A DNA stretch of 64,000 bases from Anolis carolinensis (taxonomy: Eukaryota). The notes beneath the pieces are model-generated. The model did no database searches. It was not told the origin of the DNA and worked only from the letters and a program-made list of their open reading frames with translations. The stretch spans positions 60,196,024 to 60,260,023 of the forward strand of contig NC_085845.1 in NCBI RefSeq assembly GCF_035594765.1, written 5' to 3'. Made by a program: the position numbers and the translations under genes. Shown piece by piece: positions 34,101 to 40,100 of the stretch. The stretch's first letter is position 1, and the number at the start of each line of letters is the position of its first letter.

Positions 34101-37100
34101 CCCCCCCAATTTCATTGCTTTTTCGTTCCAGAGGGGGTTGTAACGTCCCGTGCCATCCAAATGGATGGCACGGTACAAAACCAGGAAAGAAACAGATGAA
34201 ACAGGATTCAGGCCCAACTCTACGATACAGTCAGTGGATGAGCATGTGCAAATGGTGCCCTTGAATTAGAATATCGAGTAGGACTTGCCTTCCTGTTGGA
34301 TATCGAGATGAGACATTAGCTTTCATTATGAGTGTTGCTAACAGAGTTGTAGACCTTTGGTCCTCTGAGTGTTTTGTATTTCAGCTTCCAGAATACCTGA
34401 GCATTGGACTAGCTAGCCAGGACTTCTGGGAGCTGAAGACCAAAATACCTGGGGGGAAAATAAATAATTCCAAAAGTGCTAGTTATATGCAAAATTGTAT
34501 GTGAATCTAGGAAAGTAATAGCACCCAAAATGAGCAGATACATAAGGAGCAACATAAGTCAGAGATGTTACATAGAAACTATATGGAACAGATATGCCAG
34601 CTATTGCCCCTTATACAGACACACATTGCATTTTAAGAGCATGCTACTATCCTGTTTATCTCCACTGCTTTTCTGTTCAGAACAGAATATAACAGAGGTG
34701 TATGTGAGCATCTCAGATTCTTCATCCAGTTTGTGCACAGTTAGCCAATGACATAATGCTGAGAAATTGCTAATCCCTAGCAGTCTTTCCTTGCCACATT
34801 TGCTTGTGATAGTCATAAATATTGATGAAGAGCCATAGGTGTTTTCTTGGAGACATTTCTGCATCTTCTTTGCATCTACACCTGCCTTCCAGTTGAGACA
34901 TTATTAAGATTTATTGTGGGGCCTGAACATTACATCTCCTGCACCATTGCTTGAACTTTGTTGCCTTATAAGTGTTCACATTTTATTATATGAGTTAAAA
35001 ATCTTGATTTTACTTTTATTTTATTTTATATTTTGGCATGTCAAAGAGCAGTGATTTGTCCCATTCCTGCAGTCCGTCCAGGCTTTCTTACAGCAGAAAA
35101 GTGAACAGAGAAAAGATGGGGCACTTGATACATCAGGACACTCTCCGCATGGTTTCAGCACATGAGTAAATTGCTGGAAAAGTACTTCAAAGCTTGTGCC
35201 TTTGTATTGCCAAGAGGGTCAGATGCAATTAGGAGACCTGTGTCTTTTTTTATAGAGTCAAACAGCCTTTTCTTGAGTCTGGCCTTTCCACCACTATAAA
35301 GGCACATGTCTTTTCTACTTCCCTGTGTACTTTTTAATAATCTAAGTAATGTTGATAGCAATTCGGAATTGAGCTTACCATCAACAAATATACCCATTAG
35401 TGATGATTTAATATTCTTATCTTCTGGGAATCTAGATATTTAATTAAGTACATGCAGTTTGTTTTCAGTTTTTTAAAAAAAATAGTTTGTGTTGTAAGCT
35501 CCAAGCTAAATATTTTATAACATATATGGAAACTTCTTTTTTATTATTTGATAGCACACTTAAAAGAGAGACTAGAGGAGTATATTAAGCAGTGGAATGG
35601 CCTTGTAAAGATTTTTCGAAATGAAAGGAGAGAAGGTTTAATTCAAGCTAGAAGCATTGGAGCCCAGAAGGCTAAACTTGGACAGGTAGAACACTGTTTG
35701 CTAAATAAAACCCTCCTTTCTCTACAATCTACATTTTGCTTTTAACAACCTTTTAACCACTTTATTATTTTAACTGTAGTTCTTAATTGCAATATTGCAT
35801 ATAGTGTTTTAAAGATAGTTGTTAAAGCGATGTCAACTTAAAATACAAAAACACACAAGTAAATCAGTATGTATTTTGTGCAAGGAAATCTCAACTGAGT
35901 TGAAATCTCCTTTCCTCTTTATTTTAAAGGTTTTAATTTACCTTGATGCCCACTGTGAGGTGGCAGTAAACTGGTATGCACCACTAATAGCTCCTATCTC
36001 TAAAGACAGGTAATAAATTCTGCTTATTTCCATATTTCAGAAAGTATTTAAAATAGCCTTATATTTTCTTGCTCACTCAGGACAAGTAACAGTGGTTTCT
36101 GGGTGAGTAACTTTCTAGCTCTTTCTCCAAATGCCCAAATAGTTGTCTGCTGGTTGGTTGATATAATCTTGTTTTTATATGCAAGGCTATTCTGGGGTGT
36201 GTGGGAGTGATAATTGCATCAATAATTCCGGATTTGCCAAGATTGGGTATTTGTAATACTACAATTTCTAGTGTTTTAGCAAACAGATAAACTAGAAAGG
36301 AAGCAGTCTTGGAATAATATACATTTGGGATCCTATAATATGGCATTAATGTGATACAGGTTTCCATTTGGTCAAACCCCAATATACAAGGGATATCTGG
36401 AAAGTAAGCTTACAAGATTTGTTTAAAATTCAAAGAATGAATGTACAGTAGAGTCGCACTTATCCAACATTTGCTTATCCAATGTTCTAGATTATCCAAT
36501 GCAGTCTGCCTTTTAGTACTCATTGTTTTTATAGTCAATGCTTTCAATACATTGTGCTATTTTGGTGCTAAATTCGTAAATACAGTAATGACTACATAGA
36601 ATTACTGCGTATTGAACTACTTTTTCTGTCAGATTTGTTGTATAACATGATGTTTTGGTGCTTAATTTGTAAAATCATAACCTTATTTGATGTTTAATAG
36701 GCTTTTCCTTAATCCCTTATTATCCAACATATTTGCTTATCCAACATTCTGCTGGCCCATTTATGTTGGATAAGTGAGACTCTACTGTATTTTAATAAAA
36801 CTTACATGGATTATAGCATAGGTATTACATTATTTTTCCACATAATCACCATGCAGTTCAGTACATGTTGTCATCTGTGGGATGAGTTTTTTGATGCCTC
36901 TGTCTAGAAGTCTCCTGCCGCCTTTTTCAGCCAGTTCTCTTTGAGTAAATTTCAGACCCCGTCTACAGGAGTTGGTGGTGGTGGAAGAGGAGGAGGAAGC
37001 AGCAGCAACAGAGCCGGAGATGGGAGCAGAGGCGAGGCCAAGGCTGCCTCTTGGCTGGAGGGGCTCCCCAAGCTGCTGAGCCATGGCTGAGCGCACCCGG

Positions 37101-40100
37101 CCCAACATGCTGCTGCTGGAGCGAGGAGGAGGAAAGCGACAGGGAGGAAGAGGAACATGCTGCCACCTCCTCCTCTTTCCTCCTCCTCCAGCATGTTCAT
37201 CTTCTTCCTCTCCATCACCTTCCTCTTCTTCCATCTCGCGCTGGTGGCAGCATGTTGGGCCAGGTGCGCTTGGCCATGGCGCAGCTTGTTGGGTTCGGCA
37301 GCTCGGGGAGCCCCTCCAGGCAAATGGCATCCTCGGCTCTACCACCGCCTTGGCCCCTTCCTCCTCGTCACCCTCTTCCACTGCTGCCAGCTCCTGCAGA
37401 TGAGATCTGGCAGTTCCTCGAAGTGAACTGGCTGAAAAAGGCGGCAGGAGACTTCTAGACACAGGCATCAAAAAACTCGCCCCACGAATGACAACATGCA
37501 TTGAACTGCATGGTGATTATGTGGAAAAATAATGTAATACCTATGCTATAATCCATGTAAGTTTTATTAAAATATATTCATTCTTCTTATTTTTTAAAAA
37601 AAATCTTGTAACCTTACTTTCCGGTTATCCCTTGTAGTTAAAATGGTGTGAAATCATAGACACCTATCTCTTCAAAACTGTGTTCTAAAAGTGCAAACCA
37701 TAAACGTGGTTGAATTAGAAAGCATGATGTTGGAACTGACTCTTTTTTTTCCCTTTTCATCTTTCTGTGCCCTGTAAATAATAAAAATAATAGTATGGTA
37801 AAAGAGCTTATTTGGCTTTCTACCTTCCAGCAGAAAAACACCAAGCCAGTTTTCAAATGCATATATTAAGTATATCCAAAGATAGTTCATTTACTGTCTA
37901 GCTTTAAATCGGACCTATTTTTATATGTACATGTTTTAGCCAACCTAGTCTCACAAAATGGCAGTCCCTTTGAGTACAGCAGTGTTTTCCTAACAAAAAA
38001 CATATTGCTTCTATCGTTCCCCTTGAAAATATGTCTCCTAAAACTATGAATGAAGAGGTAGACTAGTGTACCGATGTTCTGCTTTTAGTGTGATTGTATT
38101 CTTATATTACTTTAAATTCATCCTGCTCATTCATAACCTCCTCCCCACTTCCTTCTAAAAGAATAGCAATGTTTTGTATGCTTGCTCTAATTACATTGGA
38201 ATAAAGTTTAAACGGTAGGCAATTATATTGGATTAGACAGCTTAACCTTGTCTCTTCCCCTTCCATAAATGTTTCAGAACTACATGCACTGTGCCTCTAA
38301 TAGATTACATTGATGGGAATGACTATTCCATTGAACCACAGCAAGGTGGGGATGAAGATGGTTTTGCCAGAGGGGCCTGGGATTGGAGCTTGCTGTGGAA
38401 GCGTATTCCATTAAGCCACAAGGAAAAGGCAAACAGAAACTATAAAACTGAGCCATATCGGTAAAGAACGCTGTTTCATTCTATTGATCTTTGTAGCTCA
38501 TGCTTATCTAAATCCTGTCATTTTCCCCCTTTCTTTTCCATGAACCATGATTCGTTTAAATGTGCCATGTACCTGCTCTCATCCTCACTGCCACCACCCA
38601 TAATCCTGCAGAACCACATGCACTGTTCCGCTTATAGATGTCATAGATGGCAACACTTATAACATTGTCCCCCAAGGGGGGGGTGACGACGATGGGTATG
38701 CTAGAGGAGCATGGGATTGGAGTATGCTGTGGAAGAGGGTGCCCTTGACCAAACGTGAGAAGGAAATGAGAAAGACAAAAACTGAGCCGTATCGGTAATC
38801 ACTAAACCACTTACACGTTTCTCCTTTTCCTAAGGGATGTGCTAAACTATTAAATATACTTGCATGAACTCTTCAGATCTTTAAAACAATGCTAACCAAA
38901 GCAGCTACTCTGTCAGGAGCATCCCTCTTTTCACTAACTCACAGTCAGGCTCTTCTAATGGTAGTCTTACTAACTCCCTTTGCACTACTCTGTAATGTAC
39001 TTTGCATACTCAGTTCTCTAAGCAAAATACAGGATAGTTCTTAATTGGATTGTTTCACAAAAACATGTGATCTGCCATTGGACCTTCGGGCTTTTTAGAA
39101 ATGGCTTAGCATGCTTGTTATGAATAGCACACTGTTAGGAATAGCAAACGTTTCTCTTGTTCGAGTGCATGCATACTGCTCATGGTTTTTTTTTTTCTTT
39201 CACTGTGTCAGGAGCGACTTGAGAAACTTCAAGTCGCTTCTGGTATGAGAGAATTGGCCGTCTGCAAGGACGTTGCCTAGGGGATGCCCGGATGTTTTAC
39301 CATCCTGTGTGAGGCTTCTCTCATGTCCCCGCATGGGAAGTTGGAGCTGACAGACAGGAGCTCACTCTGTAGTCCTGCATCACAAGGGTTTAAGCCATTG
39401 CACCACCAGAAGCTCCTACTACACATATTAACCAGAGATGGTCAGGCTGGCCCTTTGTGAAAACACAGCTACTATTGGCATATGTGGTTTTATATAGCCA
39501 CGAATCTACACATTTAAAGACCCAATGTATTGAATGGGACAAGACAAAAGCCAAGAGGTTCCTGTGATTTCTATCTTTCCTTAAAATCACTCTGAACCCG
39601 TAAGGTCAAGGTAGTGTCCCTGTTTGGGCTACTGGAAAGACCTAGTTAATAGAAGTGTAATATTTGAGTCAGAGAGTTGGCCAGAGCTCCATCTAATCCA
39701 GGCATGGGCAAACTAAGGCCCAGGGGCCGAATGTGGCTCCCTGGGCGCTTACCTCAGGCCCTCATTTTCCCTGCCCACTTGGCATATGGATGTGGTGGCC
39801 CGCCACATCCTTATGCAGAAAAGATGGGGGAGGAAGGCATGAAGCATCTGAGAGCCTATGGAATGCACTCAGCCGCCGCGTGTCTCGCCCTCCTCCCAGC
39901 ATAGGGACAGTGTGAGAGGCCCTGTCCTTATTCCGGGAGGACGGCTCGAGGAAAGCACATAGCATTTGAGAGTCCTCTGGATCACTCTCAGACATCACCT
40001 GTCTCGCCCTCCTCCTGGCATATGGCCAAGAGGACAGCCCGAAGATCGGGGGAGGATTATTGGGGAGGTGCAATTGCCTCATGTCCCGATTTGGGAGGAA

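What the first reader, a model, noticed from the sequence alone, without database searches (positions are those of the whole stretch)
38278..38794. Tandem duplicated exon 6 gives two interchangeable catalytic-domain segments in GALNT7
Seen: two 183-nt phase 2-2 exons, both open and with valid splice sites. They are 44/60 aa identical with many synonymous differences, which suggests old duplication with purifying selection on both. Differences cluster in [13 protein letters not shown] vs [13 protein letters not shown] and [10 protein letters not shown] vs [10 protein letters not shown], and net charge shifts from about -3 (6a) to 0 (6b). Known: this segment lies between the DxH and WGGEN motifs near the acceptor-peptide groove, and surface charge tunes GalNAc-T substrate choice. 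Inference: a tissue-regulated switch between two enzymes with different glycopeptide preferences. I recall 6a-like sequence in rodent GALNT7 records, so the exon pair may already be annotated; the functional difference is the open question.
Basis: partly seen in the sequence, partly recalled or inferred. Interest (0 to 1): 0.85.

Follow-up and report, generated by a model that had tools for sequence, protein, structure and literature searches.

The report
Ancient swappable exon in GALNT7 enzyme
The gene for a sugar-attaching enzyme (GALNT7) carries two alternative copies of one exon, kept from sharks to mammals and normally used one at a time, so it makes two enzymes that differ beside the substrate pocket; databases already list both forms, but no study of their difference was found.

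Summary
In detail: two open 183-nt, phase 2-2 exons (38278-38460, 38612-38794), 44/60 aa identical, in a squamate GALNT7. Both copies occur from sharks to primates, each as one clade, and are already annotated as RefSeq isoform pairs. Six shrew-like mRNA assemblies carry exactly one copy each. In ten loci the short intron between them has CTAA 16-52 nt after the 6a donor, a pyrimidine tract and 92-352 AG-free bases: the distant-branch-point design that sterically enforces exclusion in TPM1, ACTN1 and OGDH (predicted, not mapped; some gene models join both). The most telling difference is not charge: residue 332, aligned to GalNAc-T2 peptide-pocket Val255, is Tyr in 83/83 6a and Val/Ser/Ala/Thr in 124/124 6b sequences. 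The -3 to 0 charge shift is partly specific to this species. No paper on the pair was found. The scan's index showed no GALNT7 note on other DNA; a first-reader note on this same stretch also proposed steric exclusion.

The parts
38278..38460 (+). GALNT7 exon 6a (183 nt, phase 2-2; residues 323-383 in GalNAc-T7 numbering; Tyr332, Gln344)
38461..38611 (+). 151-nt intron between the copies; last internal AG at +35, then 113 AG-free bases
38508..38511 (+). CTAA block, predicted distant branch point of 6b (A at +50/+51 from the 6a donor); only invariant internal 4-mer from skate to bat
   Evidence: predicted, not mapped
38514..38539 (+). pyrimidine tract directly behind the predicted branch point (92% pyrimidine over 25 nt)
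38612..38794 (+). GALNT7 exon 6b (183 nt, phase 2-2; Val332, Gly344; the form in crystal structure 6IWQ)
38795..38975 (+). candidate regulatory stretch behind 6b: tetrapod-conserved donor extension, TGCATG at +67 (shared by snake and birds), ACTAAY at +139 and +175
   Evidence: motif matches only
35930..36009 (+). flanking exon 5 (80 nt, carries the DxH motif, ends in phase 2)
41414..41531 (+). flanking exon 7 (118 nt, carries WGGEN)

Best explanation
Exon 6 of GALNT7 was duplicated once before sharks and bony vertebrates split. The spliceosome joins exon 5 to either 6a or 6b and then to exon 7 (shown in shrew-like and skate mRNA). Because both exons are 61 codons, joining both would stay in frame and escape decay, so exclusion has to be physical: the branch point used for 6b sits about 50 nt or less behind the 6a donor, too close for U1 and U2 to assemble across that intron, and the 6b acceptor is found by scanning an AG-free zone (inferred from conserved architecture). 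The choice swaps residues 323-383 of the catalytic domain, which line the acceptor-peptide pocket. 6a puts Tyr at 332 (small residue in 6b, in other family members and in invertebrate relatives), Gln at 344 and a more acidic loop, so the two enzymes most likely differ in which peptide or glycopeptide sites they accept or how fast (inferred). The ratio probably differs between tissues (weakly inferred).
For: Pair present with intact splice sites in ten distinct loci: this window, snake, two birds, bat, frog, skate, three teleosts (taxa assigned by peptide match to named records). 6a and 6b each form one side of a branch (93/92 and 83/87 support). Isoform pairs identical outside exon 6 in Heterodontus, Amblyraja, Leucoraja, Gasterosteus, Pelodytes, Callithrix. 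Six mRNA contigs from six runs of one shrew-like species differ by at most 1 base upstream and 1 downstream but carry 6a (3) or 6b (3) at exact junctions; 12 of 12 assembled near-full-length ORFs carry one copy. CTAA at +16 to +52, pyrimidine tract 76-100%, AG-free zone 92-352 nt in 10/10 loci; shuffle p 0.0003-0.01 per locus; other acceptors of this gene have about 17-48 nt. Steric threshold about 50 nt (PMC5740500, PMC7969005). pN far below pS for both copies. Position 8 is gatekeeper Ile330 (PMC9843269); position 10 aligns to GalNAc-T2 residue 255, a peptide-pocket Val (PMC4432651); Tyr in 83/83 6a, Val/Ser/Ala/Thr in 124/124 6b.
Against: 48 database records longer than 300 aa contain both segments, including RefSeq models, so joining may occur at some level. 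The branch point is predicted; in lizard, snake and birds it is at 49-52 nt, on the threshold, and CTAAA/CTAAG is a weak consensus. The ten loci are related, not independent, and the shuffle test was designed after seeing the pattern. No read data for this species. No tissue labels for the shrew runs. No enzyme data; the Val255 match rests on the alignment start, not on a 3D superposition. Tree of 60 columns, support below the starred level.
Confidence: 0.62

Rival explanations
1. The exons are mutually exclusive, but the two enzymes have practically the same specificity; both are kept for another reason, such as stability, Golgi partners or tuning of expression through the splicing choice.
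For: The core motifs (VPLID, RGAWDW, LWKR, EPY) are the same in both. Most differing positions vary freely within 6b. No functional data exist in the papers searched.
Against: Tyr332 and Gln344 are fixed in 6a across jawed vertebrates and never found in 6b, at or near the peptide pocket; two redundant copies would not be expected to last from sharks to mammals in every lineage sampled.
Confidence: 0.2
2. The exons are alternative but not sterically exclusive: a second, ordinary branch point near the 6b acceptor allows regular co-inclusion, giving a third 718-aa product, and exclusion is left to regulatory proteins.
For: 718-aa both-exon models in turtles, alligator, bats, squirrel and several teleosts. 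Weak yTnAy matches at +121 and +127 in this intron.
Against: No assembled transcript carries both. The long AG-free zone and the invariant 5' CTAA have no purpose if a proximal branch point is the main one. Many both-exon records are labelled hypothetical or come from automatic prediction, which tends to chain in-frame exons. A 61-residue duplication inside the catalytic fold is unlikely to be functional (own knowledge).
Confidence: 0.1
3. 6a gives a low-activity or inactive enzyme (Tyr332 blocks the pocket), so the switch is an off-switch rather than a change of specificity; in this species 6a may be relaxing.
For: A bulky Tyr replaces a residue that is small in all relatives shown. This species has three substitutions in the 6a tail that is otherwise identical across many amniotes.
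Against: 6a is more conserved than 6b (88% vs 80% mean identity in 44 paired records) and keeps every catalytic-core residue; pN to snake is 0.021 for both copies. A dead form would not need such conservation.
Confidence: 0.08

Closest known systems
Distant-branch-point mutually exclusive exons of TPM1 (2/3), ACTN1 and OGDH (4a/4b) (PMC7969005, PMC1431707)
   Same: Tandem homologous exons, short conserved intervening intron, branch point about 50 nt or less from the upstream donor, pyrimidine tract behind it, long AG exclusion zone, conserved from fish to mammals.
   Different: Branch point here is predicted only and at the edge of the threshold in sauropsids; GALNT7 is not named in the main text or held supplements of these surveys or of PMC5740500, PMC7954323, nor in the main text of PMC8373072 (no supplement held).
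RefSeq/Ensembl-type GALNT7 isoforms (X1/X2) in jawed vertebrates
   Same: These records are the 6a and 6b products described here.
   Different: They are annotation only: no mechanism, tissue pattern or enzymology was found in the paper library.
Drosophila PGANT9A/9B splice switch (own knowledge; structures 6E4Q/6E4R seen)
   Same: Alternative homologous exons change a substrate-facing part of a polypeptide GalNAc-transferase.
   Different: PGANT9 swaps a lectin subdomain and its charge effect is measured; GALNT7 swaps part of the catalytic domain, and the effect is untested.
GALNT7 exon 6 skipping in endometriosis (PMC13039441)
   Same: Reports variable inclusion of an exon called exon 6 in the same gene.
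   Different: Treated as plain skipping; the passages read do not mention a second homologous exon; I did not check that the numbering matches.

Membership tests
GALNT7 (polypeptide GalNAc-transferase 7) | Best match to GalNAc-T7 and colinear exons through catalytic and lectin domains | tested here: met
Tandem-duplicated mutually exclusive exons | Neighbouring exons of equal length, same frame and phase, valid splice sites, homologous sequence | tested here: met
Tandem-duplicated mutually exclusive exons | Each copy is spliced singly between the same flanking exons | tested here: met
   shrew-like and skate mRNA assemblies; not testable in this species
Tandem-duplicated mutually exclusive exons | The two copies are not joined in one mRNA | tested here: inconclusive
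   0 of 12 assembled ORFs join them, but 48 gene models do; no junction counts
Steric distant-branch-point MXE (TPM1/ACTN1/OGDH type) | Long AG exclusion zone and pyrimidine tract far from the downstream acceptor | tested here: met
   92-352 nt in 10/10 loci
Steric distant-branch-point MXE (TPM1/ACTN1/OGDH type) | Branch point within about 50 nt of the upstream donor | tested here: inconclusive
   conserved CTAA at +16 to +52; predicted only, +51 here
Steric distant-branch-point MXE (TPM1/ACTN1/OGDH type) | Lariat mapped, and spacer insertion allows co-inclusion | not testable with these tools
   needs lariat RT-PCR and minigenes
Splice-switched GalNAc-transferase specificity (PGANT9 type) | Fixed differences at substrate-facing residues | tested here: met
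   Tyr vs Val/Ser/Ala/Thr at the Val255-equivalent position, (by sequence alignment)
Splice-switched GalNAc-transferase specificity (PGANT9 type) | Measured difference in substrate preference and tissue-specific use | not testable with these tools
   no enzyme data, no tissue labels

The most novel reading that the evidence does not exclude
GALNT7 encodes two tissue-switched enzymes whose catalytic-domain acceptor pocket differs at residue 332 and the 343-351 loop, so that one form reads a neighbouring GalNAc or peptide sequence differently from the other; work with the 6b form (the crystallised one) describes only half of GalNAc-T7, and the pair is a natural experiment on the unsolved basis of its neighbouring-site glycosylation.
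Probability: 0.4. Interest if true: 0.72.

Novelty: new member of a known kind. Interest (0 to 1): 0.5.

Why it matters
GalNAc-T7 densely glycosylates mucins by acting next to existing GalNAc, and how it does so is stated to be unknown (PMC9996832). A natural, shark-to-mammal pair of forms that differ at a pocket residue makes this directly testable, and means that expression or knockout studies that count GALNT7 as one enzyme may mix two. It also adds a deep vertebrate example of steric exon exclusion. The existence of the two isoforms is not new to databases, and the splicing design is of a well-known kind.

Tried and rejected
Some later look-ups used database proteins of other species by id (for example P0117:250-450, P0241, P0243), which include their own exon-5 peptide. 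No contig was taken for human; one human protein record appeared in a cluster list (P0210) and was left out of the tree and position tables, and the ENA-only hits P0002 and P0006 were not fetched. Rejected: pseudo-exon or recent duplication; frameshift/NMD exclusion (183 nt is in frame); U12/U2 incompatibility (both donors and acceptors are ordinary GT-AG U2 type); RNA structure as the excluder (38200-38900 folds worse than all 20 shuffles, z +1.96; long-range pairing not tested); C-terminal charge as the conserved difference. Paper searches found nothing on the exon pair; PMC7581654 and PMC6161044 are not held. Structure prediction was not run because it returns no contacts.

Full report
Observation. 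Both match GalNAc-T7 residues 323-382, 6b more closely to the crystallised form. Exons 2-12 of the gene lie in order in the window; exon 5 ends and exon 7 begins in phase 2, so either copy, both or neither keep the frame. The nearest relatives of both copies are snake sequences, so the window is from a squamate, probably a lizard.

Age and conservation. Genomic contigs fetched through exon-sized homologues hold both copies, in the same order with intact splice sites, in a snake, two birds, a bat, a frog, a skate and three teleosts (taxa assigned by peptide match to named records). Named full-length records show pairs that are identical outside exon 6 in horn shark, two skates, stickleback, a frog and marmoset. 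In a 56-row tree, 6a and 6b each form one side of a branch (93/92 and 83/87), one duplication before sharks and bony vertebrates split; with 60 columns the support is moderate and the invertebrate-like outgroups are unnamed. Both copies are under purifying selection (for example window vs bat pN 0.021/pS 0.35 for 6a, 0.085/0.43 for 6b), and 6a is the slower one (88% vs 80% in 44 paired records).

Use in mRNA. Evidence comes from other species. Six spliced contigs from six runs of one shrew-like species (cluster shared with Suncus etruscus) differ by at most one base upstream and one downstream of exon 6; three carry 6a and three 6b, at exact junctions. Skate assemblies also show each form, and none of 12 assembled near-full-length ORFs has both. 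An unbroken contig suggests that one form dominates in that run, which fits sample-dependent choice, but tissue labels were not available. Against strict exclusion, 48 records over 300 aa contain both segments, some of them RefSeq models; these may be prediction artefacts or low-level leak.

How exclusion most likely works. Co-inclusion is in frame, so decay cannot police it; splice sites are ordinary; the region shows no special folding. The intron between the copies is 104-354 nt in ten loci. In each, a CTAA lies 16-52 nt behind the 6a donor, followed by a tract of 76-100% pyrimidines and then no AG until the 6b acceptor (AG-free zone 92-352 nt). Other acceptors of this gene have about 17-48 nt, and gaps of 113 or more are 0.07% of AG-to-AG gaps in the window. 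CTAA is the only invariant internal block in an alignment of skate, frog, bat, birds, snake and this window, and in teleosts it is the canonical CTAAC/CTAAT at +16 to +34. Shuffled introns reproduce the whole pattern in 0.03-1% of trials per locus (a test designed after the fact, on related loci). This is the distant-branch-point design of TPM1, ACTN1 and OGDH, with a steric limit near 50 nt (PMC1431707, PMC7969005, PMC5740500). The branch point is predicted, and at +51 here it is on the limit, which may explain some leak. A first-reader note on this stretch proposed the same (s1-596318); I had reached and recorded this reading before the look-up.

What chooses the exon. Behind 6b, TGCATG (RBFOX type) stands at +63 to +67 in this window, snake and both birds but not bat, frog, skate or teleosts; ACTAAY (QKI type) occurs within 400 nt (258 for the frog contig) in 6 of 10 loci against 0.18 per 400 nt in the window. 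This is a lead only.

What the swap changes. Exon position 8 is Ile330, the UDP-GalNAc gatekeeper (PMC9843269). The match to GalNAc-T2 starts at exon position 4 = residue 249, which puts position 10 on Val255, listed first among the residues of the hydrophobic peptide pocket (PMC4432651); this assumes no gap in six residues, as in all alignments shown. Position 10 is Tyr in 83/83 distinct 6a sequences and Val, Ser, Ala or Thr in 124/124 6b sequences and in all invertebrate-like relatives; T1, T10 and PGANT9 have Val (note that Tyr was also my sorting rule, though the tree separates the two groups on its own). Position 22 is Gln in 82/83 6a and Gly/Ala/Trp in 6b; Asp12 and Glu19 are fixed in 6a only. 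So 6a carries the derived, tightly held residues. On charge, the conserved part is the more acidic 9-28 loop of 6a (-6.8 vs -4.6); the tail is on average more basic in 6a (+3.4 vs +2.6), the reverse of this species, whose ANRNY tail is a local change. A different acceptor preference is therefore a reasonable inference, not a result. The structural basis of neighbouring-site glycosylation by T7 is described as unknown (PMC9996832).

Comparison with what is known. The two forms are annotated as isoforms across jawed vertebrates, so the exon pair is not new to databases. The paper library gave no study of it, and GALNT is not named in the held text of several surveys of mutually exclusive exons; subscription papers and some supplements are not covered. 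One paper reports GALNT7 exon 6 skipping in endometriosis without, in the passages read, a second copy (PMC13039441). The nearest functional precedent, PGANT9A/B, swaps a lectin subdomain (own knowledge).

Verdict. Real, ancient, mutually exclusive exon pair (about 0.9), steric branch-point mechanism likely (about 0.8), functional difference between enzymes probable but untested (about 0.7). New member of a known kind; interest 0.5. The spliced model of this gene was not joined or searched; exons were handled singly by reference.

Noticed in passing
window 38795-38815: The first 20 bases after the 6b donor are nearly the same in this window, birds, bat and frog, more than a donor needs; possible regulatory element with ACTAA and YCAY-like words.
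   Followed up: partly
window 38428-38443: The 6a tail reads ANRNY here, against AKRKH in most amniotes: three changes that remove two positive charges in an otherwise near-invariant exon.
   Followed up: partly
window 36385-37636: Nested long inverted repeats in intron 5 (arms of 210 nt at 88%, 96 nt, 53 nt), probably non-autonomous DNA transposons, about 640 nt upstream of 6a; the RNA could form a long hairpin.
   Followed up: no
window 39772-40210: Cluster of short direct and inverted repeats in the intron behind 6b, likely a decayed mobile element.
   Followed up: no
P0078, P0079, P0080, P0196, P0200, P0201, P0264, P0265, P0271: RefSeq models that chain 6a and 6b (about 718 aa) in turtles, alligator, bats, squirrel and teleosts; either annotation artefacts or real leak.
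   Followed up: partly
L007:692-874: Skate 6b ends in TG, so the junction codon with exon 7 gives Trp instead of Arg (P0310, P0312); the frog 6a call P0007 also ends in Trp.
   Followed up: no
window 42543-42750 and 45628-45890: Two near-identical repeat stretches about 3.1 kb apart seen in the motif scan; matches the earlier SINE note s1-596370.
   Followed up: no
window 1-21600: Exon 1 of GALNT7 was not found in the window by tblastn; it probably lies upstream.
   Followed up: partly
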